Assembly (NCBI RefSeq): GCF_002113885.1
Contig: NW_018406035.1
Coordinates: 495,823-556,407 of the forward strand
Origin: Mizuhopecten yessoensis
Taxonomy: Eukaryota
DNA length: 60,585 nucleotides
Direction: 5' to 3'
In this document: positions 1,424 through 58,086 of the stretch, in pieces
Layout of the letters: each line of letters begins with the position of its first letter
Position numbering within the stretch: position 1 is the first letter of the stretch
Made by a program: the position numbers and the translations under genes
Notes under the pieces: generated by a model
What the model was told of the DNA's origin: nothing
The model's input: only the letters and a program-made list of their open reading frames with translations
Databases searched by the model: none

Positions 1424-1581
1424 CGTTTTCCTCTGGAAAAGTAGTCGTATCTTTGGTTTGTTTGGCATCTCGGAGCTGGACCAGCACTGCGTTGGCTATC
1501 GGTATCATCATGGCAGTAGTGGCAGTATTACTAATCCACATGGACAGGAACCACGTGGGCAGCATCATACCTAACATCAAC
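1424..1581 (-). CDS. SLC13A: SLC13 paralogue B exon 4
   Basis: [33 protein letters not shown]; AAG acceptor inside the last unit of the 47 bp array; 3' boundary (G|GTAATA) less certain. Confidence 0.88.
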
Positions 1582-4500
1582 CTTCAATGGAAGTCAACTT
1601 GTGTGTAACATCATACCCAACATCATCCTTCAATGGAAGTCAATATGAGTGTAACATCAACCTTACAATGAAAGTCAACATGTGTGTTATATCATACCTA
1701 ACATCAACCTTACAATGAAAGTCAACATGTGTGTTACATCATATCGAACATGAACCTTACAATGAAAGTCAACATGTGTGTAACATCATACCCAACATCA
1801 TCCTTCAATGGAAGTCAATATGAGTGTAACATCAACCTTACAATGAAAGTCAACTTGTGTGTTACATCATACCTAACATCAACTTTACAATGAAAGTCAA
1901 CATGTGTGTAACATCACACCCAACATCAACCTTACAATGAAAGTCAACATGAGTGTAACATCACACCTAACATCAACCTTAAAATGAAAGTCAACTTGTG
2001 TGTTATACCATACCTAACATCAACATTACAATGAAAGTCAACATGTGTGTTATACCATACCCAACATCATCCTTACAATGAAAGTCTACATGTGTGTAAC
2101 ATCATACCTAACATCAACTGTTACATCATATCCAACATCAACCTTACAATGAAAGTCAACATGAGTGTAACATCACACCTAACATCAACCTTACAACGAA
2201 AGTCAACATGTGTGTTACATCATATCGAACATGAACCTTACAATGAAAGTCAACATGTGTGTCACATCATACCTAACATAAACCTTACAATGAAAGTCAA
2301 CATGTGTGTAACATCATACCCAACATCATCCTTCAATGGAAGTCAATATGAGTATAACATCAACCTTACAATGAAAGTCAACATGTGTGTCACATCATAC
2401 CTAACATAAACCTTACAATGAAAGTCAACATGTGTGTCACATCATACCTAACATAAACCTTACAATGAAAGTCAACTTGTGTGTTACATCATACCTAACA
2501 TCAACTTTACAATGAAACTCAACTTGTGTGTAACATCATACCTAACATCAACATTACAATGAAAGTCAACTTGTGTGTAACATAATACCTAACATCAACC
2601 TTACAATGAAAGTCACCATGTGTGTTATATCATACCTAACATCAACCTTACAATGATAGTCAACTTGTGTGTAATATCATACCTAACATCATCCTTACAA
2701 TGAAAGTCAACATGTGTGTTACATCATATCGAACATGAACCTTACAATGAAAGTCAACATGTGTGTCACATCATACCTAACATAAACCTTACAATGAAAG
2801 TCAACTTGTGTGTTATACCATACCTAACATCAACATTACAATGAAAGTCAACATGTGTGTTATATAATACCCAAAATCAACCTTACAATGAAAGTCAACA
2901 TGTGTGTAACATAATTCCTAACATCAACCTTACAATGAAAGTCAACGTGTGTGTTATATAATACCCAACATCAACCTTACAGTGAAAGTCAACATGTGTG
3001 TTATACCATACCTAACCTCAACCTTACAATGAAAGTCAACATGTGTGTCACATCATATCCAACATCAACCTTACAATGAAAGTCAACATGAGTGTAACAT
3101 CACACCTAACATCAACCTTAAAATGAAAGTCAACTTGTGTGTTATACCATACCTAACATCAACATTACAATGAAAGTCAACTTGTGTGTAACATCATACC
3201 TAACATCAACATTACAATGAAAGTCAACTTGTGTGTAACATCATACCTAACATCAACATTACAATGAAAGTCAACATGCGTGTTAGACCATACCTCGCAT
3301 CAACCTTACAATGAAAGTCAACTTGTGTGTTACATCATACCTAACATCAACTTTACAATGAAACTCAACTTGTGTGTAACATCATACCTAACATCATCCT
3401 TACAATGAAAGTCAACATGTGTGTTATCCCATACCTAACATCAACCTTACAATGAAAGTCAACATGTGTGTTATATAATACCCAACATCAACCTTACAAT
3501 GAAAGTCAACATGTGTGTTATACCATACCCAACATCAACCTTACAATGAAAGTCTACATGTGTGTAACATCATACCTAACATCAACTTTACAATGAAAGT
3601 CAACATGTGTGTAACATAATACCTAACATCAACCTTACAATGAAAGTCAACATGTGTGTAACATAATACCTAACATCAACCTTACAATGAAAGTCAACAT
3701 GTGTGTTATATAATACCCAACATCAACCTTACAATGAAAGTCAACTTGTGTGTTACATCATACCTAACATCAACTTTACAATGAAACTCAACTTGTGTGT
3801 AACATCATACCTAACATCAACCTTACAATGAAAGTCAACATGTGTGTAACATCATACCCAACATCAACCTTACAATGATAGTCAACATGTGTGTAACATA
3901 ATACCCAACATCAACTTTACAATGAAAGTCAACTTGTGTGTTATACCATACCTAACATCAACATTACAATGAAAGTCAACATGTGTGTTATACCATACCT
4001 AGCATCAACCTTACAATGAAAGTCAACTTGTGTGTAACATCATACCTAACATCAACATTACAATGAAAGTCAACTTGTGTGTAACATCATACCCAACATC
4101 AACCTTACAATGAAAGTCAACTTGTGTGTTATACCATACATAACATCAACCTTACAATAAAAGTCAACTTGTGTGTAACATCAACCTTACAATGAAAGTC
4201 AACTTGTGTGTAACATCATACCTAACATCAACCTTACAATGAAAGTCAACTTGTGTGTAACATAATACCTAACATCAACATTACAATGAAAGTCAACTTG
4301 TATGTAACATCATACCCAACATCAACCTTACAATGAAAGTCAACTTGTGTGTTACATCATACCTAACATCAACCTTACAATGAAAGTCAACATATATATG
4401 TGTGTTACATCATACCCAACATCAACCTTACAATGAACGTCAAAATGACTGTTACATCATATGCTTCTGATAAGAACGGATTTCCTTATAACACTTATAT

Positions 4501-7500
4501 GATATAACGAAAAGCATTGTTATGTACAGAATAGAGTTAACCATCGACATGTAAATATGGGTAACATGTAAATATGGGTAACATGTAAATATGACCAGTC
4601 GATACATATCAGCAAGTTCGATGAGGAATCGTTTAGAATTTTGGTCTCTGTATCTACAAATGATTTTAACATAACCTTTTAAGTGTTAAAATAGTATCAA
4701 ATAGAGCTTAGCTAGTATGGGATTGGACTAATGTTTTTGACAAACATGATAGAAAAACAAAACATTAGAAACACCAAAGTGAATAGGATGATTGTGAACT
4801 ATATATAGCTATTCATATATCGTACCAGTGAGGTTCGGATCCAACTATCAGAATGATCCTTAGAGCTATTCGCTTGTGGATGTTCCAGTGTTCAATGGCA
4901 GCTGCTATAACTAGACCGCCAAGAAACAACATGGTTGTATCCTTGAGAGAGAAAAATATAACAATTAAAGGACACATTGAATAAAAGAAATATAGAGTGA
5001 ACTTGATTAACTTATTCCCTTTGGAATAGAAACACAGAACAGGTTAATAGTTTAAATGAAACGTTTTTCAAACCACTGCAAATTATATACAAATATACAC
5101 ACATATCTTTCTCCTAAATGCAGTTTGCATTTGGTTATTGGGCATTCGCGAAGAGAACGTTATGCAGACATTAGCTAAGGCTACATTTTGTACGATATTT
5201 TATGATTTTGTCCATAGAAAAAAATAACAAAAATAACAAAAATCACCATCAACACTCACGTTGACAAATTTTGAAGAAACATCCTTTGCAGACATCATTC
5301 CGACCATAGGAAATAATATTATTGGCAACAATGCCGTCACGGCAATAGGCAATGCTTCTGTCACCCAGTACACCGCCATGATGATGACCACATAGGCACA
5401 TTCTGATTCCTAGGAATGAAATACAAAACATCATTCACATTAAGGTGTTGCTTCTACTGGTTATATACACGGTTTGATACATATATTGGCCAGACTGACT
5501 ATTGTTGTACTTGTCGCATATGCATTACAGGGATAATCTTGAACAACTCTACTGTAACCTGCTACGTACATTCCTATGTCCACCTAGCACATTTCTTGTT
5601 ATATGTATATGTTATGCCTTTTCATTGAAGACCTAGGCTAATAAGGTAACACATGTATGTATTGCATCGATAAAACATAATGGTAACGAAAAGCTTCATG
5701 GTGTTCATCAAGAAACAAACATCTATACTATTTTTTTATTTTTTTAACTCGTTCGTCCAAAGGAAAGGGAGGACGGTTAGGAGTTCTGTTCTCTAATCGA
5801 GATATAAATCGAAGTCCTAAAAACTGGCGCTCAAAACTCTCTGCTTCACGGTCGCCTTTGAATGGATGGTGGTAGGACTGATTGGATTGCTGTCAGTTAA
5901 TTAAGTTACAAGGTTGTTATGTATCATTCAGATTGCACATAAAAGGGGATATAAAGTGGCCCAGTTATTAGGGACGCCATTTTCATACACCGTGTATGAC
6001 TTTCGGTATGAGGAGCACGTAAAATCCCATACATACAGGGATGTGTTAACAAAAGAAAACTGCACACTCTGCATGTTCACCCATTTGCCAACTCTTATGA
6101 ACATGCAAATTGCAGACAATTGATGTCTCAAAACACTGAGCGCTGTTTCCAAAGCTTCAACAGAGAAGCTAATTGATCATAAATGTGTTGTACGAAAATG
6201 CCCTACCCCCCCCCCCCCCCCCAAAAAAAGAAAAACATAAATCAATAACATAAAAATAAAAAAAACTAATGTTATTTCTGAGCCTCTGATAATGAAATGG
6301 GTAGAAAAATAGGTCTTGAAAGGGTCTTTTTGTTGAAGACAATTGCTACGAAACATAAACCCCACATTAATACGCGGTTTAAAAAATTGCAAATTGAATA
6401 ATGTTGCAATAGAAACCATATTTCAGTCTTGTGGCAGACCACTTACAAGAATAGTTTTTCTGCTCCCTTCAAAGTGTATCAATTATTTGTTTGTTATATA
6501 TGGATATATTGCAGTTTAACACAATTGTTGAGCTGCATGACCCAACTTGCATGAACATTGTATGACCCAACTAGCATGTACATTGTATGACCCAACATGC
6601 ATGTACATTGTATGACCCAACATGCATGTACAATGTATGACCGAACATACATGTAGATTGTATGACCCAACATGCATGTACAATGTATGACCCAACATGC
6701 ATATAGATTGTATAACCCAACATGCATGTACGGTGTATGACCCAACATACATGTACAGTGTATGACCCAACATACATGTACAGTGTATGAATCAGTGGAT
6801 AACAACAAGCTTGGATTTAACTATTCCTCATTCTTTCTGTAATGATTTAACAAAATGATTGAGGTAGTAGCTATATTAGCTCGGGTTGTACATTATTCTT
6901 GAATTTACGTTTTTACGTTTTAGTATTTACGAAAACCCACCGTTGACCTTTGTTTCTCCTTGGCTGCACTATGTTTGATGTTAGCTACTTTAACTTGACA
7001 CACCGCATAGTAATTCACAAAACAAGTGCTGATCCCTGTATTAACTGGAGGTGTACCTGTACTTGAAGACATTGTTGTCTAATGCGTGATTATTTTAAAA
7101 TCAAAATGAAGTGCAAACGGTTTTTTTATAAAGTAAAAATATAAAGAAATTCAGTTTCCTGGTTAAGAAATCAAAATGATCAATTCTGGGGAAACCAATT
7201 AAGCTTACATAGCTTTGAACAGACAGGTCTATGCAGGTAAACTGTCAGCCTGTGTTTATAGAGAATGATAACGTTTACTACGCATTTCGTATGAAGTGAT
7301 TATCAAATATTGACGTAAAATTAGAAATTGTACGGGATATGAATAAATATCATTATGCTAATTTTGCCACGTTTTATGACGGTCCAGATAACGACATTAG
7401 ATTAAGGGACAATCTCATCGGTGGACACCGTTGTCTTATTAGCATAGTTATTTCAATAATGTGGAACAACTTACTATAACAGCAAATCATGATTTTAAAT

Positions 7501-9266: not shown

Positions 9267-10915
9267 TTTGCCGAGAAAATTATTGTCCTGTTTAGTGTGA
9301 AGATGACACTACATGCAGATATACTGATGTTAATTTAAATTTGAGTATTCAAACAGATCCTATCGACCACTGCCCGTCTGGTATCCTGGCACAGACAGAA
9401 GTGCCCCTTCGGTATTATCTGCCTCTCATATCCGTGTAAGGTAAAGTTTGGGCCAATAGAGACGACGGTAAACAATGTGCTGAGTAAGTGACATGTTGAT
9501 ATGCTTAGACATACACATGAGTACTACGCAACGTCCTAGTTTTGCATGGCCGATTGTCTCCTACTTTATTTACATAATATATTTAACCTGTGTTGATATT
9601 TCCATCGTTGTCTTAAGAGTATTTAACTTAAATTAACATAAATGTATCAAATAAAAATGAAAAGGACATACACACTTTAAATATCGACGCTTAGGTACTT
9701 TTATGAAACAAAACAGTAAATTTCTTCATTAAAGTTGATATAGGAATGAATCAGTCCCCTTGTTTGAATCGACAAACTACAGTGTAGTGCAAATACGCAA
9801 AGGTTGTTAAGTTATGTATCGCACTCTAATCTATGGTGTGTCAATTGCCAAATTACCGTTCAATCCTTATGTTAGAATTTTGAAAATTGAGCCTCACGTC
9901 ATTTATTGAAAGATTATTTACCAATGCATGTGACATCTAAACACATATATTGTGCAAATCGTCCTAATGTTTATGAGAAGTTCGGCCATACAAACCCACT
10001 TTCCATATTCAAACCACAATATTACAGGACAAAACCTTTAAACATGTATTTCTTATAAGACATCCTCCACATGCCTAAACTGTTTTGTTTTGGTGATACC
10101 ATACAACCTAAATGTTTCGATGGTATTTCCTTTTGTTAACGTAAGGAACGTTATTTTACTACACTGCCATTTAAACGCACTAGATGCCATTTTTGCGCTT
10201 ATAAAAATGTCGACCAGCTATTTCCATTCATAACCTGGCAGACTAGCGAGACTATGGTTACAACTACGTCTTGTTGGCGCTGGCATCCTTGCATTACTAA
10301 TACAAATCATTAGTGTATGAAAACCCGCTTCTGAAAAAAACACTTCAGAACAGTTCGTTAACCCAAGCAATAATTTCAGTTTTTAGTATGTTCCCTAGGT
10401 TTGTTTTGTAAGTTTGTCAAAAATGTGTTGTCCTATACAGGTAGTGCTCATAAATTATAAGAATACGCTAAAGTATCCTCTCATGGAAGCCTGACAATCC
10501 TCTTGATTCTGCAGCGGCTGCCATCACATTAGTCGCCTCTAATGGTATTACGGTTTAGATCCATGCATAGACTTTGCCATATCTGGAAATGAAAGGCTGT
10601 GATATTTGGAGGATTTGAATGAGATTAAAAACCCCGCTAAATATTTTGCATGTAAACAGGATGTGTCTGATGCACAACCATAAACTTCCTTAGAAAAAAA
10701 TGGTTTGAATGAGTTCAAATTTAAGTAAACTGAAATTCCCAAACCAACTCTATCATCAAAAAATCATAAATTTCGGTCATTTTCTCATTGTATAAATTTA
10801 TGTATAGTCTGTTGATGGAAATGTAAATTTGATGAATGTTTTTAACGTTATCGACATTCAAAGTAGTTATAATCAGTGTAAGTGGGTAGTGTAAGTGGGT
10901 GGTGACATATGTAAT

Positions 10916-11450
10916 CCCTGCAGGTAGGGCGTAAGAATTGTACCTGCTGCCCCCAATTGCATGATCGTAAGAGGCGACTAAATTTGGGACCTTATCTCTT
11001 CTCTCCTTTCTAAATAACTTTCTTCTTCCTAATGTCTCCCTTGACAATGCCTCACTTTTGGCCATTTGTTGAGCGTTCGCCCCTGTGAGGAAGGCTTTGG
11101 GTTCTGTCCCCTGGCCGAGACATACCAAAGTCTTTAAAAATGGTAGTTTCTACTCCTGCTTAACGCTCAGCAAATTAGGAGTGGGACGACTGGTTCGCCC
11201 GTTGTCAGTATAATGTGACCGGGTGGGGCGTCCTGCTGGGTGTCTTCGGCAGTATGTTTCAGTGAGGTAGCACTATAAAGTCGGCATCAGTTCCGCGCTA
11301 TCACAAGGAGACGAACACGAACATATCGCAGCCTCCCAAAATACACACACATACACTACACGCATGCATCTTGCACACAGGGGAGGCCGTCCTTAAATGA
11401 CCTTAGCTGTTAATAGGACGTTAAACAAAATCAAACAAACAAACAAACAA
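10916..11450 (+). mobile_element. Full-length composite SINE (structured head, degenerate tRNA-like segment, Nin/Deu-like core, (CAAA)n tail)
   Basis: 13 bp TSD tggtgacatatgt (10900-10912 / 11451-11463); tail gaccttagctgttaataggacgttaaac(aaac)n; near-identical copy at 12902. Domain naming is from recall of molluscan SINEs. Confidence 0.88.
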
Positions 11451-12357
11451 TGGTGACATATGTGTTTCTTTGTTTTGGGATACCATATATTTAACGGCTC
11501 CGATGACGTTTTCCTCGATCCGGAACAGAAGAATACTGTTTAAAGTGATAATATGCGTGTTTGATAAAAAAAAGATATAAAAAGTTGGTCTTTTATACTG
11601 CTTAAAATTGTTTTTTGCTTTGATTAGATCACTTTATATTGAAACCAAATATCACAGTTGTATCAACAGTAATGGGCAATAGAAATGAATTGAAGGAGAA
11701 TCATAGTGGACAATATAAGTGTTTGTATGCGACTTATTGATGTCTATCTATGTAACATACATATAACACGGTAACACAAATGCAGAGAAAAGTAATCGAT
11801 AACATAGTTTTTTGTTCACGGATGTTTGTTTGTGGTTAAGTTGAGAGTGTGCGTAAATACAGATATAGTATATACGTTAGTACAGATACAGCCATGCTAG
11901 AAACATGTCAACAGGTAATATACAACTATTACCGGTAGCATGACATTCATTTTAGGCGTGATATAATATTGATAATGCTCATTGAAACCGGTCAGAAAGA
12001 GAATGAAAATTAGTAAAACCAAATTCTGCCCATGATAAATACCTCACTGTTTCAGTTTCTGACTGTATAGTGATTTACGCATCTTAATTTTACTTCATCT
12101 GTTATTTCATTAAAAATCATTACACAAATTATTTGGATACATGATGGATACATTGCTATAACATCAGTGGTGACTGTTTCTCTACTCAGTCGTTAGTCGC
12201 TATACAGTTACTACAGGTGTTTCTGTTTGTGACATCATTTGCATATTTGTGAAAAGGTAATGTCAGATGGTTGCAGTAAACTTATTATAATTTGGCAGTG
12301 ATGTCGCTTTTATGCGCCAATATGAATATGTCAAGGCCGTTGTTTAGATACACCTGG

Positions 12358-12848
12358 TGTTGTTTGGTGTTGTATTGTTTAACGCCCTATCGGCCTCCCC
12401 CGTGTGCAAGATGTATGCGTGTGTGTTTTGGGAGGCTGCGATATGTTCGTGTTTATCTCCTTGTGATAGCGCGGGACTGATGCCGACTTTATAGTGCTAC
12501 CCAACTGAAACATACTGCCGAAGACACCCAGCAGGACACCCCACCCGGTCACATTATACTGACAACGGGCGAACTAGTCGCCCAACTCATAAATTGCAGA
12601 GCGTTAAGCAGGAGTAGAAACTACCATTTTTACAGACTTTGGTTTATCTCGGCCAGGGGACAATACCCAAAGCCTTCCTCACAGGGGCGAACTCTCGACT
12701 AAAGGGGAAAAGTGAGGCATTGTCAAGGGAGACATTAGGAAGAAAAAGTTGTTTAGAAATAAGATCAAAGATAAGATCCCAAATTTAGTCGCCTCTTACG
12801 ATCACGCTATGGGGGCAGTAGGTACAATTCTTACGCCCTATCTGCAGT
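12358..12848 (-). mobile_element. Diverged SINE copy of the same family, opposite orientation
   Basis: Reverse complement aligns along the 10916 copy; TSD tagatacacct (12345-12355 / 12852-12862). Confidence 0.88.
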
Positions 12849-12901
12849 GACTAGATACACCTAGTACCATGCAAGTACCACGTTTACCTAAGTATGACAG
12901 T

Positions 12902-13437
12902 CCCTGCAGGTAGGGCGTAAGAATTGTACATGCTGCCCCCAATTGCATGATCGTAAGAGGCGACTAAATTTGGGACCTTATCTCTTCTCTCCTTTCTAAA
13001 TAACTTTCTTCTTCCTAATGTCTCCCTTGACAATGCCTCACTTTTGGCCATTTGTTGAGCGTTCGCCCCTGTGAGGAAGGCTTTGGGTTCTGTCCCCTGG
13101 CCGAGACATACCAAAGTCTTTAAAAATGGTAGTTTCTACTCCTGCTTAACGCTCAGCAAATTAGGAGTGGGACGACTGGTTCGCCCGTTGTCAGTATAAT
13201 GTGACCGGGTGAGGCGTCCTGCTGGGTGTCTTCGGCAGTATGTTTCAGTGAGGTAGCACTATAAAGTCGGCATCAGTTCCGCGCTATCACAAGGAGATAA
13301 ACACGAACATATCGCAGCCTCCCAAAATACACACACATACACTACACGCAAGCATCTTGCACACAGGGGAGGCCGTCCTTAAATGACCTTAGCTGTTAAT
13401 AGGACGTTAAACAAAATCAAACAAACAAACAAACAAA
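12902..13437 (+). mobile_element. Full-length SINE copy, nearly identical to 10916-11450
   Basis: TSD taagtatgaca (12889-12899 / 13438-13448); only a few substitutions relative to the first copy. Confidence 0.9.
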
Positions 13438-14901
13438 TAAGTATGACATGCACAGCATGTGTCACATATCATTACGTAATGTAGGTAATATTCTGAAAAA
13501 TCAATACTTCCGTGTTCAGGAAATAAAATAACTTTTTTTAAAATCTCAGTAGAGCCATTATCGTGGAAAATTTATGGTCAGTGTGCACCCAAATAATGTT
13601 TAGTAACATTTATAAAAAGTAAAAGATTTTGCAGCCGTACCGGTTTTTCTATTTTTTAAGTTCATTGTCATGAGGTCGGTACCATTGGCACTGACATAAT
13701 TGCGACGCTTTAGTGTCACGTTTCTTTTTACGTTATATCAAATTACTGATAAGCTATGCACCAATTAAAGTGAGGTTAAATTTGCCCCAGTGCACACTGA
13801 AGAGGCGTTCTGTTGTACTGAATACAACTCAGTCAAAGTCCTACAGAACAAGCCGTGCATCTTTGCAAATGTAAAGTTTACCTTTGAATATCGAAATTCG
13901 AAAATGCAACATCGCAAAGGACGTTATGGCAATAATTGATTGCGAAATGCATTGTTTTGTCTACCTAGAATGAAAACAATCTTGATACATTTAGACATTT
14001 ATTCCCTATATCCAAAGCACTATTGCTTTCTATTTCTACATTGGTTACTGTGATACAGGGATATTAGAAAATATACATCAATATGCATGTTACCAATGCA
14101 CGTGTTTCGGATAATGGCCGAAGCAAAATGTTTAATAAGTACAAGAAATAATAAGTAGAAAACAAATTAACGAAGTGTAATTCTTCAGAGATCCATTCTA
14201 AAACGCAAAGAAAACCCATCTGAGACTAGCGATCATTTTATTATATAACTTTGAATCATATAACTTGGACTTCTCTGAGGAATAGAGAGAGAAATATATG
14301 GATGATTGTTTACGTAAACTCAATGCGCCGTGTCGCTCGAGTTGATTAACTTCATGTATGGTTTATTGCAGTTTATGGATGCATTTTTGCTAGAATATCC
14401 TATGTGTGTACTGTTTATTTGATACAACAATCTGCACATATATTAACATACATGATTGCGGGACACCCGTGATCTGGTTTGAACTAGATTGTCGCTCTGT
14501 AAATATCGTAACGTCATCGATTCGGATATTTGTTTCTTTGTTTTCTTCTAGTTTCTCATATAAACTAATGTCATTTGAAGTCAGGTACCTAAGGAAACAT
14601 TTTAAACAAGTATCATCGAAATATTATGTGAAGGACAATAAACGCCATATATTCGATTTTTCAAATGTTTATGCCGGTATAAAAATCATCAAGCGTAAAT
14701 CTGTATTAAGATTCTCAAAAACGGACCATGGATTTACAAGTTCTTACAGCACAATTTGATCGAATGATTCAAACCATGTAGCAAACATCCAGAAACTGAA
14801 ACACCAAGTGCTTCCTGTCCTGTCCTTTGTACTATGAATTATTGTTTAATTAGAAGAAGAAATCGTTTAACTATTTTAGCGTTGTATTCATCTTACTCAA
14901 G

Positions 14902-21000: not shown

Positions 21001-22590
21001 GACATTTTTTAAGAAACTAAGCACGGCAATAAGTGCCCAAAAACACAGTATTGGAACATTTGCATATTAAATTTGCCCTTTGGTAGTTGAGAGTCTGGCA
21101 CCAGTCACTTACCTTGGGTTTAACCGAAACATGATCAATAAGACCCGGTACGTGTAACTACTAGTTTGCTGAGTATTGTAACGGAAACACGTGTTAGATG
21201 TTAAGACGATCGTGAAGGACTATCAGGATAATTATTCATTTAAGAGTAGCAGTAGTTAAATTGCTAAGCGCAAACTGAGATTTTCTCATATAAATTCACG
21301 ATTGTCATATATGAATGCACTTAAGAAAGTTAACTTCCCCATTTTAAACTTATGATGAATTGTGATAAACTAACTTAATTGGGTAAGACAGTAACTGATT
21401 ATATTAATCTAGCCAGCAGTACCTTCGTGAGTGCCCTGATCGATGGAATGAATATTCTGCAGCTGTAAAAGAACAGCATTTGCTATCGGCAGCATCATGA
21501 CGGCAGTGGCAGTGTTACTCATCCACATTGAGAGAAACCACGTCGGAATCATCATCCCAAGCATTAGCCTGTACTAGGAAAATACATCTTCATTACTAAG
21601 GGCAACATATATTTCTCCTTTCCAGTCGGCTTTTTGCACGTGGAAATGTCAATATTCAAGGTCATACAAACGATATGTCAACAAATGAGTGGTTCCTTCA
21701 AGGGTCATTATAAAGTCCGGAAAGGTTTTTGACCAGGTCATGTTTTAAAGATTTTATTTTGAACCAACATAAATATGCAAATATAGCCCATCTATGAAAT
21801 GATAATTACACCATTGACATTAATATGTATCTAACTTGAGAAAGAATGTTTAAAAAATCTACAAATAACTGTTGTGCCCCTAATAGATCAAACTCTTTTC
21901 TGTTTCGCTCCAGATGCTGTTTTTCCAGTTGAGTCACACATGAACAGCATTTAACATATTATATAAAGGCTGAATCTGGACCACTTACATAGTCCTTTGT
22001 AAGGACTAGAATCCATATTTTGACTAAAATAACATTAATTTGTAATCTACTCAGTAATTGTAATTGTCATTACTCTAACTGTTAGTTAAACCTAGTGATT
22101 GACAAACATAAAATCAACCAAAAAGTGTTTTACAAAAAGGATCCATGAATCATACAAATAATACAAAATAATCAGCATTTGCTATTTGTACCGATATCAT
22201 TGATGCCTCAACACATTTTTGTTGTGTTTTTGTCACAAAAAAAAGTAAAGTCTTCCATTGATAAACTTCTAATATGTTCAGTATTATGCTAGGTCTTACC
22301 AGTGGGGTTCAGATCCAAACCAAAGCAGAACTCGCAGTGCAAATAACTTGTGGATGTTCCAGTGCTCAATAGCATGTGCGAGGATAAGTCCGCCTACGAA
22401 TAGCATGGACGTATCCTATTAAAAATCAAACACGATTTTCAGAAATAGCTTCCAATATATTGATCGAATTTTTCTTCATAACTGGTATGAATAACATGCT
22501 CAAATCGCGCCTAGATGTTCGGGGAGGAATATACCTGCTGTATCCTACTGGGTGTTATCGTAAAATGTAACATCACCCTCCCTGCAGATA

Positions 22591-34580: not shown

Positions 34581-34620
34581 TGTGAGGAGAGGAAGTAAAA
34601 GGGGCACGACGATTTACCGC

Positions 34621-35745
34621 AAAACACCCAAAACTACCCCAAAACACCCAAAACTACCCCAAAACACCCAAAACTACCCCAAAACACCCAAAACTACCCC
34701 AAAACACCCACAACTACCCCAAAACACCCAAAACTACCCCAAAACACCCAAAACTACCCCAAAATACCCACAACTACCCCAAAATACCCACAACTACCCA
34801 AAAACACCCCCAAAACACCCAAAACTACCCCAAAACACCCAAAACTACCCCAAAACACCCACAACTACCCCAAAACACCCACAACTACCCCAAAACACCC
34901 ACAACTACCCCAAAACACCCACAACTACCCCAAAACACCCACAACTACCCCAAAACACCCACAACTACCCCAAAACACCCAAAACTACCCAAAAACACCC
35001 ACAACTACCCCAAAACACCCACAACTACCCCAAAACACCCACAACTACCCCAAAACACCCACAACTACCCCAAAACACCCACAACTACCCCAAAACACCC
35101 ACAACTACCCCAAAACACCCACAACTACCCCAAAACACCCACAACTACCCCAAAACACCCACAACTACCCCAAAACACCCACAACTACCCCAAAACACCC
35201 ACAACTACCCCAAAACACCCACAACTACCCCAAAACACCCACAACTACCCCAAAACACCCACAACTACCCCAAAACACCCACAACTACCCCAAAACACCC
35301 ACAACTACCCCAAAACACCCACAACTACCCCAAAACACCCACAACTACCCCAAAACACCCACAACTACCCCAAAACACCCACAACTACCCCAAAACACCC
35401 ACAACTACCCCAAAACACCCACAACTACCCCAAAACACCCACAACTACCCCAAAACACCCACAACTACCCCAAAACACCCACAACTACCCCAAAACACCC
35501 AAAACTACCCCAAAACACCCAAAACTACCCCAAAACACCCAAAACTACCCCAAAATACCCACAACTACCCAAAAACACCCACAACTACCCAAAAACACCC
35601 ACAACTACCCCAAAACACCCACAACTACCCCAAAACACCCAAAACTACCCCAAAACACCCAAAACTACCCCAAAACACCCAAAACTACCCCAAAACACCC
35701 CCAAAACACAACAAAACTAACCAAAAACACCCAAAACTACCCAAA
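34621..35745. repeat. 20 bp C-rich/G-rich minisatellite, ~55 copies, inside an insertion in the LINE
   Basis: Unit ccccaaaacacccacaacta, highly homogeneous centre. Confidence 0.96.
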
Positions 35746-39188: not shown

Positions 39189-42180
39189 ATATCGTTCACC
39201 TCTACTATATCGTACATCTCTACTTTATCGTTCTCCTCTACTTTATCGTACACCTCTACTTTATCGTACACCTCTACTTTATCGTACATCTCTACTTTAT
39301 TGTTCATGTTTACTTTATCGTACACCTCTACTTTATCGTTCACTTCTACTTTATAATTCACCTCTACTTTATCGTTCACCTCTACTTTATCGTTCACCTC
39401 TTCTTTATCGTTCCCTTCTACTTTATCGTTCATGTTTACTTTATCGTTCATGTTTACTTTATCGTTCACCTCTACTTTATCGTACATCTCTACTTTATCG
39501 TTCATGTTTACTTTATCGTACATCTCTACTTTATTGTTCATGTTTACTTTATCGTACACCTCTACTTTATCGTTCACTTCTACTTTATAATTCACCTCTA
39601 CTTTATCGTTATCGTTCACCTCTACTTTATCGTTCACCTCTACTTTATTGTTCACTTCTACTTTATTGTACATCTCAATTTTATCGTTCATGTTTACTTT
39701 ATCGTACACCTCTACTTTATCGTTCATGTTTACTTTATCGTTAACTTCTACTTTACCGTACATCTCTACTTTATCGTACATCTCTACTTTATCGTTCATG
39801 TTTACTTGATCGTACATCTCTACTTTATTGTTCATGTTTACTTTATCGTATACCTCTACTTTATCGTTCACTTCTACTTTATAATTCACCTCTACTTTAT
39901 CGTTATCGTTCACCTCTACTTTATCGTTCACTTCTACTTTATTGTACATCTCAACTTTAACGTTCATGTTTACTTTATCGTTAACTTCTACTTTATCGTG
40001 CATCTCTACTTTATCGTACATCTCTACTTTATCGTATATCTTTATTTTATCGTACATCTCTACTTTATCGTACATCTCTACTTTATCGCTCACGTTTACT
40101 TTATCGTGCACCTCTACTTTATTATACATCGCTACTTTATCGTTCATGTCTACTTTATCGTATACCTCCACTTTATCGTTCATCTCTACTTTATCGTACA
40201 CTTCTACTTTATCGCTAAAGTTTACTTTATCGTACATCTCTACTTTATCGTACATCTCTACTTTATCGTACATCTCTACTTTATCGTTCATATTTACTTT
40301 ATCGTACACCTCTACTTTATCGTATATCTCTACTTTATCATACATCTCTACTTTATCGTACATCTCTACTTTATCGTACATCTCTACTTTATCGTTCATG
40401 TTTACGTTATCGTATCTCTACTTTATCGTTCACGTTTACTTTATCGTGCACCTCTACTTAATTATACATCTCCACTTTATCGTTCATCTCTACTTTATCG
40501 TACACTTCTACTTTATCGCTCAAGTTTACTTTATCCTCACCTCTACTTTATCGTACATCTCTACTTTATCGTGCACCTCTACTTTATCGTATATCTCTAC
40601 TTTATCATACATCTCTACTTTATCGTACATCTCTACTTTATCGTTCATCTCTAATTTATTGTGCACCTCTACTTTATCGTACATCTCTACTTTATCGTTC
40701 ATCTCTATTCTTTATCGTACACTTCTACTTGGTCGCTCACGTTTACTTTATCGTACATCTCTACTTTATCGTACATCTCTACTTTATCGTACATTTCTAC
40801 TTTATCGTTCATGTTTACTTTATTGTACATCTCTACTTTATCGTTCATCTCTAATTTATTGTGCACTTCTACTTTATCGTATATCTCTACTTTATCGTTC
40901 ATCTCTACTTTATCGTACACTTCTACTTTATCGCTCACGTTTACCTTATCTTTCACCTCTACTTTATCGTACATCTCTACTTTATCGTGCACCTCTACTT
41001 TATCGTACATCTCTACTTGATCGTACACCTCTACTTTATCGTACATCTCTACTTTATCGTACACCTCTACTTTATCGTACATCTCTACTTTATCGTACAT
41101 CTCTACTCTATCGTGCACCTCTACTTTATCGTACATCGCTACTTGATCGTACACCTCTACTTTATCGTTAACTTCTACTTTATCGTGCATCTCTACTTTA
41201 TCGTACATCTCTGCTTTATCGTTCATGTTTACTTTATTGTACATCTCTACTTTATCGTTCATGTTTACTTTATCGTACACCTCTACTTTATCGTTCATGT
41301 TTATTTTATCGTACATCTCTACTTGATCGTACACCTCTACTTTATCGTTCATGTTTATTTTATCGTGCACCTCTACTTTATCGTACATCTCTACTTTATC
41401 GTACACCTCTACTCTATCGTTCACCTCTACTTTATCGTATATCTCTACTTTATCGTACATCTCTACTTTATCGTACATCTCTACTTTATCGTTCAATTTT
41501 ACTTTATCGTACACCTCTTTTTATCGTTAACTTCGACTTTATCGTGCACCTCTACTTTATCGTGTATCTCTACTTGATCGTACACCTCTACTTTATCGTA
41601 CATCTCTACTTTATCGTATATCTCTACTTTATCGTACATCTCTACTTTATCGTTCATGTTTACTTTATCGTACATCTCTACTTTATCGTTCATGTTTACT
41701 TTATCGTACATCTCTACTTGATCGTACACCTCTACTTTATCGTTCATGTTTACTTTATCGTACATCTCTACTTTATCGTACATCTCTACTTTATCGTACA
41801 TCTCTACTTTATCGTTAACTTCTACTTTATCGTACATCTCTACTTTATCGTACACCTCTACTTTATCGTTAATTTCTACTTTATCGTAAATCTCTACTTT
41901 ATCGTTCATCTCTACTTTATCGTGCATCTCTACTTTATCGTTCATCATTTTATCGTACACCTCTTTTTATCGTTAACTTAGACTTTATCGTTCACCACTA
42001 CTTTATTGTACAACTTTACTTTATCGTACACCTCTACTTTATCGTAAACGTTTACTTTATCGTTCATCTCTACTTTATCATACATCTCTACTTTATCGTT
42101 CACCTCTACTTTATGGTACATCTCTACTTTATCGTACATCTCTACTTTATCGTACATCTCTACTTTATCGTTCATGTTTA
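39189..42180. repeat. 18 bp satellite, ~165 copies, heterogeneous
   Basis: Unit ctctactttatcgtaca(t/c) with variants gtttactttatcgttcat. Confidence 0.96.
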
Positions 42181-43885
42181 CTTCACGTACACCTCTACTT
42201 CACGTACACCTCTACTTCACGTACACCTTTACTTCACGTACACCTTTACTTCACGTACACCTCTACTTCACGCACACCTCTACTTCACGTACACCTCTAC
42301 TTCACGCACACCTCTACTTCACGTACACCTTCACTTCACGTACACCTCTACTTCATGTACACCTCTACTTCACGTATACCTCTACTTCACGTACACCTTT
42401 ACTTCACGTACACCTTTACTTCACGTACACCTCTACTCCACGTACACCTCTACTTCACGTACACACTTTATCGTTCACCTCTACTTTATCGTTCATGTTT
42501 ACTTTATCGTACATCTCTACTTTATCGTACATTTCTACTATATCGTACACCTCTACTTTATTGTACAAATCTTCTTTATCGTTCACCTCTACTTTATCGT
42601 TCATGTTTACTTCACGTACACCTCTACTTCACGTACACCTCTACTTCACGTACACCTCTACTTCACGTGCACCTCTACTTCACGTACACCTTTACTTCAC
42701 GTACACCTTTACTTCACGTACACCTCTACTTCACGTACACCTCTACTTCACGTACACCTCTACTTCACGTACACCTCTACTTCACGTACACCTCTACTTC
42801 ACGTACACCTCTACTTCACGTACACCTCTACTTCACGTACACCTCTACTTCACGTACACCTCTACTTCACGTACACCTCTACTTCACGTACACCTCTACT
42901 TCACGTACACCTCTACTTCACGTACACCTCTACTTCACGTACACCTCTACTTCACGTACACCTCTACTTCACGTACACCTCTACTTCACGTACACCTCTA
43001 CTTCACGTACACCTCTACTTCACGTACACCTCTACTTCACGTACACCTCTACTTCACGTACACCTCTACTTCACGTACACCTCTACTTCACGTACACCTC
43101 TACTTCACGTACACCTCTACTTCACGTACACCTCTACTTCACGTACACCTCTACTTCACGTACACCTCTACTTCACGTACACCTCTACTTCACGTACACC
43201 TCTACTTCACGTACACCTCTACTTCACGTACACCTCTACTTCACGTACACCTCTACTTCACGTACACCTCTACTTCACGTACACCTCTACTTCACGTACA
43301 CCTCTACTTCACGTACACCTCTACTTCACGTACACCTCTACTTCACGTACACCTCTACTTCACGTACACCTCTACTTCACGTACACCTCTACTTCACGTA
43401 CACCTCTACTTCACGTACACCTCTACTTCACGTACACCTCTACTTCACGTACACCTCTACTTCACGTACACCTCTACTTCACGTACACCTCTACTTCACG
43501 TACACCTCTACTTCACGTACACCTCTACTTCACGTACACCTCTACTTCACGTACACCTCTACTTCACGTACACCTCTACTTCACGTACACCTCTACTTCA
43601 CGTACACCTCTACTTCACGTACACCTCTACTTCACGTACACCTCTACTTCACGTACACCTCTACTTCACGTACACCTCTACTTCACGTACACCTCTACTT
43701 CACGTACACCTCCACTTCACGTACACCTCTACTTCACGTACACCTCCACTTCACGTACACCTCTACTTCACGTACACCTTTACTTCACGTACACCTCTAC
43801 TTCACGTACACCTATACTTCATGTACACCTCTACTTCACGTACACCTCTACTGTAACGTACATCTCTACTTCACGTACACTTCTA
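42178..43885. repeat. 17 bp satellite, ~90 copies, highly homogeneous, with an 18-mer relic at 42465-42610
   Basis: Unit ctctacttcacgtacac. Confidence 0.96.
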
Positions 43886-44577
43886 CTTTATCAAACACAT
43901 CTACTTTTTCGTTTACCTTTACTTAATCGTATAACTCGTATTGATCGTACTCTGCTACCTTTTCGTTCACATGGTACATATATCAAATCACACCATACGT
44001 ATTACAAATCACACTATATTTGTCAAAACAACAACTTAAATGCTTTCTGATGTTACATCTGTCATGTTATAAAAGTTGTCAGCAATAACTTTCGAAAAGT
44101 TTTGCCGTATTTCGTTTAAGGTGTGATATTGGCTCTGACAACAATAAATCTGACTTACGGCGACAACTCGAAAATCAAACCGATTACACACATTGAACAT
44201 GGAAACCCAGTGAGAGAATCAGAAGGTAAGGTAACTTTTGATTAGTTTACTTTTCTGATATTTTATATGATTAGCGGATAATCATTTTGTCTACTAGAAT
44301 AACACAATGTATACCATCACTCTTCTTAGTACCAGTACATTCATGCGGGAAACCATTACATACCTGAATTATATTTACACTTAATTTCCGATAAATTGGG
44401 TAAATGGTTCAGTGACATTCATTAAAACAAAACGTAACAGTCCTTTTTACCCAGCATGCCACTGACATCATCACCTTCGATATCTTTGATATTCAGAGGA
44501 AACTGTTGAAGGAGTTTAGACCATTTAACCATTGTGACCCGCCGCACGAGCAATTGAGCTAAATCGATGATTTTTAC

Positions 44578-44800
44578 GTAACTCTACTTCACGTACACCT
44601 CTACTAATATAGCCTAGAGTAATATTAATATTAATATTAGTACGTGAAGTAAAGGTGTACGTGAAGTAGAGGTGTACGTAAAGTAAAGGTGTACGTGAAG
44701 TAAAGGTGTACGTAAAGTGGAGGTGTACGTGAAGTAGAGGTGTACGTAAAGTAGAGGTGTACGTGAAGTAGAGGTGTACGTAAAGTGGAGGTGTACGTAA
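44578..44800. repeat. Inverted block of the 17 bp satellite
   Basis: ~1.5 forward units, AT-rich spacer (aatatt)n, then ~9 units gtgtacgtgaagtagag. Confidence 0.9.
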
Positions 44801-46332: not shown

Positions 46333-47812
46333 AGGTGTCTAATGTCCCTGAGGTAAACAGTATCTCTCAAGATGTGCCTAATGTCCCCGAGGTGAACAGT
46401 ATCTCTCAAGATGCGTCTAATGTCCTTGAGTTGAACAGTATCTCTCAAGATGTGCCTAATGTCCCTGAGGTGAACAGGATCTCTCAAGTTGTGTCTAATG
46501 TCCCTGAGGTGAACAGTATCTCTCCAGAGGTGTCTAATGTCCCTGTGACGAGTATCTCTCAAGATGCGTCTAATGTACTTGAGTTGAACAATATCTCTCA
46601 CGATGTATCTAATGTCCCTGAGGTGACCAATATCTCTCAAGATGTGTCTAATGTACCTGAGGTGAACAGTATCTCTCAAGATGCGTCTAATGTCATTGAG
46701 TTGAACAGTATCTCTCAAGATGTGCCTAATGTCCCTGAGGTGAACAATATCTCTCACGATGTGTCTAATGTCCCTGAGGTAAACAGTATCTCTCAAGTTG
46801 TGTCTAATGTCCCTGAGGTGAACAGTATCTCTCACGAAGTGTCTAATGTCCCTGGGGTGAACAGTATATCTCAAGATGTGTCTAATGTCCCCGAGGGGAA
46901 CAGTATCTCTCAAGAGGTGTCTAATATCCCCGAGGTGAACAATATCTCTCACGAAGGGTCTTATGTCCCTGGGGTGAACAGTATCTCACAAGATGTGCCT
47001 AATGTCCCTGGGGTGAACAGTATATCTCAAGATGTGTCTAATGTCCCCTAGGTGGACAGTATCTCTCAAGAGGTGTCTAATGTCCCTGTGACGAGTATCT
47101 CTCAAGATGCGTCTAATGTCCTTGAGGTGAACAGTATCTCTCAAGATGCGTCTAATGTCATTGAGTTGAACAGTATCTCTCAAGATGCGTCTAATGTCAG
47201 TGAGTTGAACAGTATCTCTCAAGATGTGTCTAATGTCCCCTAGGTGGACAGTATCTCTCAAGAGGTGTCTAATGTCCCTGAGGTGAACAATATCTCTCCA
47301 GAGGGGTCTAATGTCCCTGTGACGAACCGTATCTCTCAAGATGTGTCTAATGTCCCCGAGGTGAACAGTATCTCTCAAGAGGTGTCTAATGTCCCCGAGG
47401 TGAACAATATCTCTCACGAAGTGTCTTATGTCCCTGGGGTGAACAGTATCTCTCAAGATGTGCCTAATGTCCCTGGGGTGAACAGTATCTCTCAAGATGT
47501 GCCTAATGTCCATGGGGTGAACAGTATCTCTCAAGATGTGCCTAATGTCCCCGGGGTGAACAGTATCTCTCAAGATGTGTCTAATGTCCCCGAGGTGAAC
47601 AGTATCTCTCCAGAGGTGTCTAATGTCCCTGTGACGAACTGTATCTCTCAAGATGTGTCTAATGTCCCTGGGGTGAACAGTATCTCTCAAGATGCGTCTA
47701 ATGTCCTTGAGTTGAACAATATCTCTCAAGATGTGCCTAATGTCCCTGAGGTGAACAATATCTCTCAAGAGGTGTCTAATGTCCCTGTGACGAACCGTGT
47801 CTCTCTAGATGT
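46333..47812. repeat. 39 bp minisatellite, ~38 copies
   Basis: Unit gtgtctaatgtccctgaggtgaacagtatctctcaagat. Confidence 0.95.
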
Positions 47813-48820
47813 GGTATTGAGAATTTAATGATGTGTGATTTGTTCAGTTATGTATCGATTTTGTATAGTTGGCAAATTGTTTGGTCTATACAACACAAAA
47901 AGATAAATATAAACAAAGATTTTAAAAAAAATGATGTTATTGTACATATTAGGAAATGTGCATTAAAAGTGGATTATACGTAGGACAACTCCTGCCATAG
48001 TGTGTGTAGTAATTGTTTATCACTATATCAAAACATTGTCGCCTGCCAATAAAACTCCATGTAGCATTCATCTGTGCCTACACTCGTGAATTATATATCA
48101 CCTCTGTGTATTTAATGCTCAACGTCATTAATGTTGTGAACGCTGCAGTGTTTATTTTTTGTAAGCAGACATATTAATCCCACATGACCAAACTTAATCA
48201 AACCCTAAATAATAATTTATTGGATATATGGTATTGCTTTAATTTTGTCTCTGCTGTATAGAGATTAAATAGTACTTATGATTAGGAGGTGTTGGTGACT
48301 AGGGCTAAAGTTTTGTCTTTTACGACAGTAGAGGACTTACACGTTGAACTGTATAACCGATTTATGATTGACTGGTTAACGGATTAACTTCGTAAAACAC
48401 AAACATTTTTAATGGAGAGTGACACAAACGAATTTTGTGTAAGAGGTCCAACGATGTTGTACAACAGTTTATTTGGACAGTGAACCCGGATGTAGATTCG
48501 TTACACTGTAGATCTACAAAGTATAAATTATTTGGCAAACTTATCAAAACTACTGAAATATAACACATGTGTTTAAAGGACCCAGGTATGACTTCGTTAA
48601 TAGAACGGATCGTGTTTGCCATCGGTATGTATTTTGGCTAAGCAATTGGTATTGGTATATCAATCAATATTTGTATTAATTGTGTATGTTCATAGAACTA
48701 AATGTCATGGTATATACATATATATATATATTGTATTGCTCAGTATTTATACTTGTTTGAATTGGTAGGTATCTATCATTGTATGTATCACTAATGTTAT
48801 TGGTATTTATTACATACTCA

Positions 48821-49127
48821 CTAATAAAAACGGTTTTTTTGTATATGCGATACAACACAATTGCTCTAACCCGTATCAGTCCTCTCCGTATCACACCCCT
48901 TTTTCTTTTCTTTTTTCTTTTTTTAAATATTTCAAAAGAAAAACAGATCATACGATAATAGATATATCCGTATTGTATAAGTAAGTATGTAATAAACAGA
49001 ATAAATCATGCCTTTTTCCATATCACAACAAGTATCAACCCTTGACCAATATCAGCACTCGGGCTGAAATTGGAGTCTCGGGTTGATACTGGGTGTGATA
49101 TGGAAAAAGGCATGTATTATTCTCTAT
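48821..49127. mobile_element. Short non-autonomous hairpin-ended element (MITE/Crypton-like), copy 1
   Basis: Terminal palindrome catgcctttttccatatcaca...tgtgatatggaaaaaggcatg; second copy at 50511. Confidence 0.7.
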
Positions 49128-49879
49128 GTATCTATTTATTTTTATATCTCTACTTTAATTGGTATATATCTATCATTGTATATATCTCTACTTTTATTGG
49201 TACATGTATGTATCTATTTATTTTTATATCTCTACTTTAATTGGTATGACAGTCAGACATTCTTTATTCCCTCCTTGCGGAAGTTTGTAGTACATGTATA
49301 CACACATTCACAATATTTCAACATAATGTTATATACTAAGACGGACAATGACATGACATTAAACACGATTGTTCTAAAGCATATATACGTTAAACACTAT
49401 ATTTGCAACAGTTCATAACAGAATCTTTCATAAGAGCTCATTCATCTCAGCAGTCATGATTGGCATATTTGTCGCCATGTCTACCATGAGTGTTTCCCAT
49501 TCTGTATCTGTTCTATTAATTTTACTTCTATCTCCAAGTAGGAACTACATCATATATTTTCGGTTGCATTCGAAAATAAAATATAACTTTGCACTTCAAT
49601 AGAGCGTATACACCGTCTAGTAATATATCCCTACTTTTAAAGAGCTTTGGACAATAAAAAATGCAAGACTTTTTCATTACTCCGTTTACCACATAATTTA
49701 CATAGAACTTCTTTCAACTCAAAACGATATGCCAGTTTGATCAGCTCAGTAATTGTTAGAGTTGATTTTGGATGCTTTCTGCTTAGCTCCTATTAAGGGT
49801 TAGGGTGTCTGTGTGGATGTATAGATACATATTTACTGAGTGCATCCATGTTATTTAAATGATTTAAATATCTCTTTTT

Positions 49880-50500
49880 TAATTAGTATGTATCTACTGA
49901 TTTATATCTACTGATTTATATATCTTTACTTTTATTGGCATGTATCTATTGATTTATATATCTCTACTTTTATTGGTATATATCTATTGATTTATATATC
50001 TATACTTTTATTGGTATATACAAATGTATCAATTGATTAATATATTTCTACTTTTATCGTTATGCATCTACTGATTTATATATATCTACTTTTATTGTTA
50101 TGTATCTATTGATCTATATATCTCTGCTTTTATTGTTATGTATCTATTGATTTATATATCTCTACTTGTATTGGTATATATCTACTGATTTATATATCTC
50201 TACTTTTATTAGTATATACAAATGTATCTATTGATTAATATATTTCTACTTTCAATGGTATGAATATAGTGATTTATATATCTCCACTTTTATTGGTATA
50301 TATCTATTGATTTATATATCTCTACTTTTATTGGTATGTATCTATCGATTTATAAATCTCATTTCTAAATTAGTATGCATCTATCATTGTATATATCTCC
50401 ACTTTTTTGGTATTTATTGATTGATTTATATATCTATATATCTCATCTGTTATTGGTATACATCTATTATTGTATATATTTCTTCTTTTATTGGTATTTA
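49880..50500. repeat. 38 bp AT-rich satellite, diverged block
   Basis: Unit atatatctattgatttatatatctctacttttattggt; further remnants at 49125-49245. Confidence 0.9.
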
Positions 50501-50510
50501 TTACATACCT

Positions 50511-58060: not shown

Positions 58061-58086
58061 TATGTAACATTCAGCAGTCTTTTTGT

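What the first reader, a model, noticed from the sequence alone, without database searches (positions are those of the whole stretch)
1563..4460. A satellite made of a splice junction: ~60 tandem copies of the intron3/exon4 acceptor of SLC13 paralogue B
Seen: on the transcribed (minus) strand the consensus 47 bp unit reads ...TGTTGACTTTCATTGTAAG|GTTGATGTTAGGTATGATG, i.e. 28 nt of intron end plus the first 19 nt of exon 4 (LMLGMM). Only the last unit (acceptor at 1582-1584) continues into the real exon; upstream copies hit TAA/TGA within a few codons. This inflates intron 3 to 3244 nt versus 731 nt in paralogue A. Inference: the spliceosome must skip dozens of near-identical decoy 3' splice sites, so array length could tune productive versus NMD-bound transcripts, or the gene could be partly silenced by it.
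Basis: partly seen in the sequence, partly recalled or inferred. Interest (0 to 1): 0.8.

Follow-up and report, generated by a model that had tools for sequence, protein, structure and literature searches.

The report
Intron minisatellite copied from a splice acceptor
A 2.9 kb run of about 62 copies of a 47-base unit inside an intron of a mollusc SLC13 transporter gene really is a repeated copy of that intron's own 3' splice junction, but this resembles known human minisatellites that span splice sites and stay mostly silent, and no effect on expression could be tested here.

Summary
Window 1563-4461 (minus strand) holds about 62 tandem units, mostly 47 nt. Each unit is the tail of intron 3 plus the first 19 nt of exon 4 (LMLGMM) of SLC13 paralogue B. 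Only the 3'-most unit runs on into the exon. Intron 3 is 3244 nt, against 731 nt in paralogue A. The unit occurs nowhere else in the 988 Mb genome, and none of 13 other SLC13 exon-4 copies or 8 mollusc orthologue loci has such an array.

- 46 units keep an AG|G pseudo-acceptor, and all of these give a stop after 6 or 10 codons.
- 43 of the 46 score well below the real acceptor on a small same-gene matrix, because of a 1-nt insertion that also creates a strong donor-like GTAAG.
- 15 of 52 full-length units have lost the AG.
- Only three decoys (1627, 1802, 2330) match the real site in strength.

Human F7, IFI6, CBS, LMNB2 and PDGF carry the donor-side mirror image, and there the exon-proximal site is used almost exclusively. 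The most likely reading is a locus-specific minisatellite born by slippage and largely inert in splicing. No RNA data were available.

The parts
4826..4941 (-). Exon 3 of SLC13 paralogue B; ends ...CACTG, with donor GT at 4825-4824
   Evidence: Sequence; Pfam Na_sulph_symp 32 bits against a cutoff of 27, profile positions 84-120; 72% amino-acid identity to exon 3 of paralogue A
1582..4825 (-). Intron 3 of paralogue B, 3244 nt, phase 2 (it splits the Trp codon TG|G)
   Evidence: The same intron position is found in paralogue A, in 12 further paralogue copies and in 8 orthologue loci
4462..4825 (-). Unique 5' part of intron 3, upstream of the array; contains a small 17-nt x 2.8 repeat at 4547-4593
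1563..4461 (-). Junction-derived minisatellite of about 62 units (53 of 47 nt, 3 of 46, 4 of 35, 2 irregular). Each unit has a branch-like TTGAC, a short pyrimidine run, (GT)AAG|G and the exon start. The array begins and ends with ATGATG.
   Evidence: All 58 genome-wide matches to the 26-nt core lie here
1424..1581 (-). Exon 4 of paralogue B (158 nt), starting G TTG ATG TTA GGT ATG ATG, with the real acceptor AG at 1583-1582
   Evidence: Acceptor score 5.1 bits, within the leave-one-out range of 19 genuine sites (5.9 +/- 4.1)
1627..1643 (-). Nearest strong decoy acceptor ('ccattgaag|GAT'), 46 nt upstream of the real one. Using it would add 46 nt and give a stop after 10 codons. Sister copies have their cut sites at 1802 and 2330.
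   Evidence: Score 6.7 bits, at least as high as the real site; frame outcome
21569..22299 (-). Intron 3 of paralogue A (731 nt), with no junction copies; the comparison locus
   Evidence: 0 junction-probe hits
21423..21568 (-). Exon 4 of paralogue A; same LMLGMM start in different codons (GCTAATGCTTGGGATGATG)

Best explanation
This is a locus-specific intronic minisatellite. It arose when a 47-bp segment spanning the intron 3/exon 4 acceptor of SLC13 paralogue B was duplicated in tandem, probably by replication slippage between ATGATG microhomologies. It then expanded to about 62 units by slippage or unequal exchange. The duplication left an intact junction at the 3' end, so the gene still works and all upstream copies became part of the intron. 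Most upstream copies are weakened pseudo-acceptors: a 1-nt insertion puts a G at -5 and creates an overlapping donor-like GTAAG, and about a quarter of all units have lost the AG. By analogy with junction-spanning minisatellites at human donor sites, splicing most likely goes almost entirely to the exon-proximal authentic acceptor. At most there would be minor use of the nearest strong decoy (1627), and those products carry a premature stop. What is shown: the structure, its junction origin, its uniqueness, the coding outcome of each decoy, and the relative site strengths. What is inferred: the slippage mechanism and the near-silence of the decoys.
For: The array and its junction content are established. 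The exon part encodes the conserved LMLGMM found in every paralogue and orthologue, and intron 3 sits at the same position in all of them. The junction is therefore ancestral and the satellite is derived from it. The unit is found only at this locus in 988 Mb. No array occurs in 13 other paralogue copies or in 8 orthologue loci. The array starts and ends with ATGATG. Paralogue B is intact over about 13 exons. The real acceptor scores 5.1 bits, the 46 decoys average -1.6, and three decoys score 6.7. The acceptor G is one of only 8 variable unit positions (G37/T9/A6). Tandem arrays are common in this region, with about ten distinct arrays in the 60 kb window, so expansion needs no special cause. 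Human F7, IFI6, CBS, LMNB2 and PDGF have junction-spanning minisatellites in which the authentic site, or that site plus its two nearest neighbours, is used (PMC1557585).
Against: There are no transcript data, so the silence of the decoys is an analogy taken from donor sites in mammals. The scoring matrices rest on only 19 acceptors and 20 donors read off by eye from two paralogues. Three decoys score at least as well as the real acceptor. Thirty-nine units also carry a donor-like att|GTAAGG (7.4 bits, against 7.0 +/- 2.2 for real donors), so 42-nt poison pseudo-exons are possible on paper. The real acceptor is pyrimidine-poor with A at -3, unlike most orthologues, which leaves room for competition.
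Confidence: 0.68

Rival explanations
1. Expression rheostat. The decoy acceptors, or pseudo-exons bounded by a decoy acceptor and the GTAAG of the next unit, capture a copy-number-dependent share of transcripts. These transcripts carry premature stops and are degraded, so array length tunes the output of paralogue B.
For: There are 46 intact AG|G decoys, all followed by a stop within 10 codons. Three decoys are as strong as the real site, and one of them lies only 46 nt upstream. There are 39 strong donor-like sites. The authentic acceptor is weak.
Against: There are no RNA data. Forty-three of the 46 decoys score far lower than the real site. Donor-side analogues in human genes are silent or nearly so (PMC1557585). 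Nothing in the sequence points to selection for the array, and none of the 13 other paralogue copies or 8 orthologue loci has one.
Confidence: 0.15
2. Assembly artefact. The array, or at least its length, was produced by mis-assembly of a repeat.
For: There is no second copy or haplotig in the assembly to compare with. A related scallop paper notes that repeats were over-collapsed in scallop assemblies (PMC12121003), so the copy number may be inexact.
Against: There are 35 distinct sequences among the 52 full-length units, with ordered local block duplications. The window contains no N. The flanks are unique, and the array joins the real exon in the correct frame.
Confidence: 0.05

Closest known systems
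Human F7 intron 7 VNTR (37 bp, 5-9 copies) and similar minisatellites in IFI6 (6-16), CBS, LMNB2 and PDGF (PMC1557585)
   Same: It is a minisatellite whose terminal unit spans an exon-intron boundary, so the authentic splice-site sequence is repeated many times inside the intron. Use of most pseudo-sites would break the reading frame. The array is specific to one locus.
   Different: Those arrays repeat the donor (5') site and start at the exon's 3' end, whereas this one repeats the acceptor (3') site and ends at the exon's 5' end. This array has about 62 units, against 5-25 in the human cases. Here most pseudo-sites differ from the real one by a 1-nt indel, whereas the F7 pseudo-sites are identical to the authentic site. 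Splicing behaviour and length polymorphism are unknown here.
Internal tandem repeats at exon-intron boundaries in human segmental-duplication genes (PMC2812944)
   Same: In both cases a minisatellite expansion at an exon-intron boundary lengthens an intron in one recently diverged paralogue but not in the other, and may affect splicing.
   Different: The human cases average 30-bp units repeated about 4 times and come with transcript evidence. Here the paralogues are old (third-codon-position identity 0.45), the array is far longer, and there is no transcript evidence.
Intron gain by tandem duplication of an exonic AGGT (Rogers model; PMC3265369, PMC2891723)
   Same: A tandem duplication carries AG|GT, and the duplicated copy is removed as intron, leaving the protein unchanged.
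   Different: No new intron is created here. The duplication spans a pre-existing ancient boundary and only extends that intron.

Membership tests
Junction-spanning intronic minisatellite (F7 IVS7 type) | Head-to-tail array with a minisatellite-size unit inside an intron | tested here: met
   47-nt period, 60 copies by TRF; about 62 units by direct parsing
Junction-spanning intronic minisatellite (F7 IVS7 type) | The terminal unit spans the exon-intron boundary, so the authentic splice-site sequence is reiterated in the intron | tested here: met
   The last unit runs into exon 4 at 1581. The 19-nt exon start recurs 56 times. The boundary is on the acceptor side, not the donor side as in the described cases.
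Junction-spanning intronic minisatellite (F7 IVS7 type) | Pseudo-sites silent, or only the nearest ones used, in vivo | not testable with these tools
   No transcript data were reachable. Records of the same or very near genomes may be left out of the public look-ups (tool caveat).
Junction-spanning intronic minisatellite (F7 IVS7 type) | Copy-number polymorphism among individuals (VNTR) | not testable with these tools
   Only one assembly copy exists; the metagenome scan found nothing
SLC13 / divalent anion:Na+ symporter gene (Pfam Na_sulph_symp, CitMHS) | Match to the family profile on the exons flanking the array | tested here: met
   Exon 3: PF00939, 32 bits against a cutoff of 27, profile positions 84-120. 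Exon 4: profile positions 122-163, below the cutoff on its own. Named mollusc SLC13 homologues. Exons were searched separately, not joined.
Intron gain by AGGT tandem duplication (Rogers model) | Intron at a novel position absent from paralogues and orthologues | tested here: not met
   The intron 3 position (TG|G) is shared by all 14 exon-4 copies in this genome and by 8 orthologue loci
Recursive splice site (ratchet point) | A strong 5' splice site is regenerated after splicing to the internal acceptor | tested here: not met
   CTG|GTTGAT scores -1.7 bits against 7.0 +/- 2.2 for 20 genuine donors of the same genes. The matrix is small.
Dispersed satellite DNA family | The same unit is present at several genomic loci | tested here: not met
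   All 58 matches (up to 2 mismatches) in 988 Mb lie in this array. The BLAST-type search found only this locus.

The most novel reading that the evidence does not exclude
The array is an acceptor-side splice-site VNTR that acts as a copy-number-dependent rheostat. Its 46 stop-bearing pseudo-acceptors and about 39 strong donor-like GTAAG sites divert or stall a tunable share of SLC13-B pre-mRNA, through NMD-targeted mis-splicing or U1 loading on the intron. Array length differences among individuals would then set transporter expression.
Probability: 0.12. Interest if true: 0.65.

Novelty: new member of a known kind. Interest (0 to 1): 0.35.

Why it matters
Minisatellites that repeat an authentic splice site have served as natural test beds for how the spliceosome picks one site among many look-alikes, as with F7 intron 7 for 5' site choice. 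This locus offers the acceptor-side counterpart at an extreme copy number, in an invertebrate. It has graded decoy strengths: three full-strength decoys, 43 weakened ones and about 15 without the AG. It also has overlapping donor-like motifs. If RNA data showed strict use of the last site, that would be a strong natural case for exon-proximal 3' site choice. If decoys are used, array length could be a heritable expression variant of a citrate/dicarboxylate transporter. As it stands, it is a well-documented structural curiosity with no demonstrated function.

Tried and rejected
1. Dispersed satellite family: rejected, because the unit is strictly locus-specific.

2. Haplotig comparison for array length: no second copy of the flank exists in the assembly.

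3. Independent occurrence in public metagenome contigs: 0 matches.

4. Shared ancestry with the two extra junction copies in orthologue locus L021: the 46-nt inter-copy segment is not significantly similar to the unit (114 of 2000 shuffles score as well), and third codon positions are near saturation. I treat it as independent.

5. Regular higher-order repeat: mean unit identity is flat at about 0.90 across lags 1-24. Only local block duplications are seen near the exon, namely 35+46-nt unit pairs at 1678/1643, 1853/1818 and 2381/2346.

6. Recursive splicing: the regenerated donor is poor.

7. Pseudogenisation of paralogue B: not supported, since all exons are open and conserved.

8. Organism identity: named homologues are molluscan. 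The assembly size of 988 Mb in 82,659 contigs matches my recollection of the Yesso scallop assembly, but the one paper found only gives 724-988 Mb as the range for scallop genomes, so this is unverified.

9. The large representative-protein search was not run, because the protein family was not in doubt.

10. The joined (spliced) protein model was not built or searched. Exons were searched one by one by reference, so the annotated mRNA or protein of this gene could not be retrieved.

11. A literature search for an acceptor-side example found none. That search was narrow, and a second attempt failed on syntax.

Full report
**Observation**

On the minus strand, window 4461-1563 is a head-to-tail array. 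TRF reports a 47-nt period, 60.0 copies and 84% matches over 1652-4461. Parsing by a unit anchor gives 62 units: 53 of 47 nt, three of 46 nt, four of 35 nt and two irregular. A 36-nt junction probe matches 48 times against 0.00 expected. The 19-nt exon start matches 56 times against 0.03 expected. All matches lie inside the array.

Reading the sequence, exon 3 of the gene is 4941-4826 with donor GT at 4825-4824. The real acceptor AG is at 1583-1582 and exon 4 is 1581-1424, so intron 3 is 3244 nt.

The consensus unit reads TTGACTTTCATTGTAAG|GTTGATGTTAGGTATGATG followed by T(A/T)ACACACA(A/T)G. That is intron tail plus the first 19 nt of exon 4. The only slips are that the AG is at 1583-1582 and that not every unit is a live decoy.

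**The gene**

Translations of exons 3 and 4 hit Pfam Na_sulph_symp and CitMHS at adjacent profile positions, 84-120 and 122-163. Named homologues of exon 4 are mollusc SLC13 proteins.

A second paralogue (A) lies at about 14.9-22.9 kb on the same strand. Its intron 3 (22299-21569) is 731 nt. Its exon 4 opens with the same LMLGMM peptide in different codons.

I fetched 40 kb beyond the window's left end. This showed that paralogue B continues for about 13 exons, all open and with the family's conserved motifs, so it is not an obvious pseudogene.

The joined spliced model was not built or searched, so the annotated mRNA for this gene could not be retrieved.

**Direction of descent and uniqueness**

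Intron 3 splits a Trp codon (TG|G) at the same place in all 14 SLC13 exon-4 copies of this genome and in eight orthologue loci from other molluscs. Most of these copies start exon 4 with GTTGATG. The junction, including its AG|GT, is therefore ancestral, and the satellite was copied from it rather than the reverse.

The 26-nt unit core, allowing up to 2 mismatches, occurs 58 times in the 988 Mb genome. All 58 are in this array. A BLAST-type search agrees.

No other paralogue copy has junction-like duplicates within 1.5 kb upstream. None of the eight orthologue loci has an array, and their complete intron 3 lengths are about 590-890 nt, plus one of 3.65 kb without repeats.

The array begins and ends with ATGATG. 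That fits an initial slippage between two ATGATG microhomologies 47 nt apart, but this is inference.

Several orthologues read ATG TTA CCC AC at the point where units read ATG(ATG) TTA CAC AC. The exon-derived share of the unit may therefore be up to 27 nt, with the real exon later changing TTA to CTG. This too is inference.

**What the decoys would do**

Forty-six units keep a junction-type AG|G. Joined to the exon 3 frame, every one reaches a stop after 6 or 10 codons.

I built small scoring matrices from splice sites of the two paralogues, read off: 19 acceptors and 20 donors.
- The real acceptor scores 5.1 bits. Leave-one-out scores of the genuine sites are 5.9 +/- 4.1.
- The 46 decoys average -1.6 bits, and 43 of them score at most 1.9.
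- Three decoys reading 'ccattgaag|GAT', at 1627, 1802 and 2330, score 6.7.

The gap comes mainly from a 1-nt difference. Most units read 'cattgtaag', which puts a G at -5, while the real site and those three decoys read 'cattgaag'.

The same extra T creates att|GTAAGG in 39 units. This donor-like site scores 7.4 bits, against 7.0 +/- 2.2 for genuine donors, and it overlaps the decoy AG.

Fifteen of 52 full-length units have lost the AG altogether (GTAAT or GTAAA). That G is one of only eight variable positions in the unit.

The donor that would be regenerated by recursive splicing (CTG|GTTGAT) scores -1.7.

These matrices are small and the sites were chosen by eye, so only large differences should be trusted.

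**Comparison with what is known**

- F7 intron 7: 37 bp, 5-9 copies.
- IFI6 (6-16): 25 pseudo-sites.
- CBS: 15-20 repeats.
- LMNB2 and PDGF.

In F7, LMNB2 and PDGF only the authentic site is used. In IFI6 and CBS the two nearest pseudo-sites are also used. [quoted passage not shown]

PMC2812944 reports 27 intron modifications caused by tandem repeats at exon-intron boundaries in human paralogues.

PMC3265369 and PMC2891723 cover intron gain by AGGT tandem duplication. That does not apply here, because the intron is ancient and the duplicated segment spans an existing boundary.

The present array is the acceptor-side mirror image of the F7 class, with far more copies. One narrow literature search found no described acceptor-side case. 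That is not evidence that none exists.

**Verdict**

The finding is real and neatly described, and it belongs to a known kind. The most likely account (about 0.68) is a locus-specific minisatellite born by slippage at the junction and tolerated because the 3'-most copy stays intact. The upstream copies would be mostly weakened or dead pseudo-sites, so splicing would go almost entirely to 1581.

The rheostat idea stays open at about 0.15. The best candidates for real competition are the decoy at 1627 and pseudo-exons bounded by GTAAG. An assembly artefact is unlikely for the array's existence, given 35 distinct units among 52 and no N in the window. The exact copy number is uncertain, however.

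Deciding between these readings needs transcript and population data that these tools do not reach.

**Earlier scan note**

Note s1-507983 covers the same stretch. It pointed to AG|GT in the units and proposed intron gain with an 11-nt micro-exon. The motif is present. The intron-gain reading is not supported, because the intron position is ancient.

Noticed in passing
L021:1300-1835 (Logan SRR26215654 contig, B-like orthologue from another mollusc): Its 873-nt intron 3 holds two extra copies of its own acceptor junction, at -46 and -518 nt (19/24 and 18/24 matches; 0 hits in 200 shuffles). The 46-nt spacing is close to the 47-nt period here, but the inter-copy segment is not significantly similar to the unit (114 of 2000 shuffles). 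This may be independent, recurrent duplication of the same junction.
   Followed up: partly
window 39190-43950, 44640-44798, 49100-52760, 58086-60585: Several minisatellites with different periods (18, 17, 38/44 and 42 nt) share the core CTCTACTT or its complement. There are 247 occurrences against 1.9 expected. The 17-nt array is inverted relative to the 18-nt one. The junction-derived array does not contain this core.
   Followed up: partly
window, whole: About ten distinct tandem arrays cover roughly a quarter of the 60.6 kb window (for example 20 nt x 55 at 34615-35704, 39 nt x 38 at 46335-47813 and 34 nt x 22 at 50561-51331). Minisatellite expansion is therefore commonplace in this region.
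   Followed up: no
window 10902-11482, 12383-12850 and 12894-13468: There are three copies of a roughly 500-nt dispersed element, two direct at 94-100% identity and one inverted. They lie between or within the SLC13 paralogues. An earlier scan note (s1-508060) calls it a composite SINE.
   Followed up: no
L030 (G000:C5554:1063783-1063905): Another SLC13 paralogue in this genome has an exon-4 acceptor reading 'tggtaag|GTTGATGTTGGGG'. A GTAAG-type acceptor like that of the decoy units therefore appears to sit at a genuine exon boundary elsewhere.
   Followed up: no
G000 contigs C5565 and C5553: The SLC13 family is expanded in this genome, with 14 exon-4 copies. These include a cluster of four near-identical copies within about 40 kb on C5565, and two pairs that look like assembly duplicates (L032/L033 and L037/L038).
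   Followed up: no
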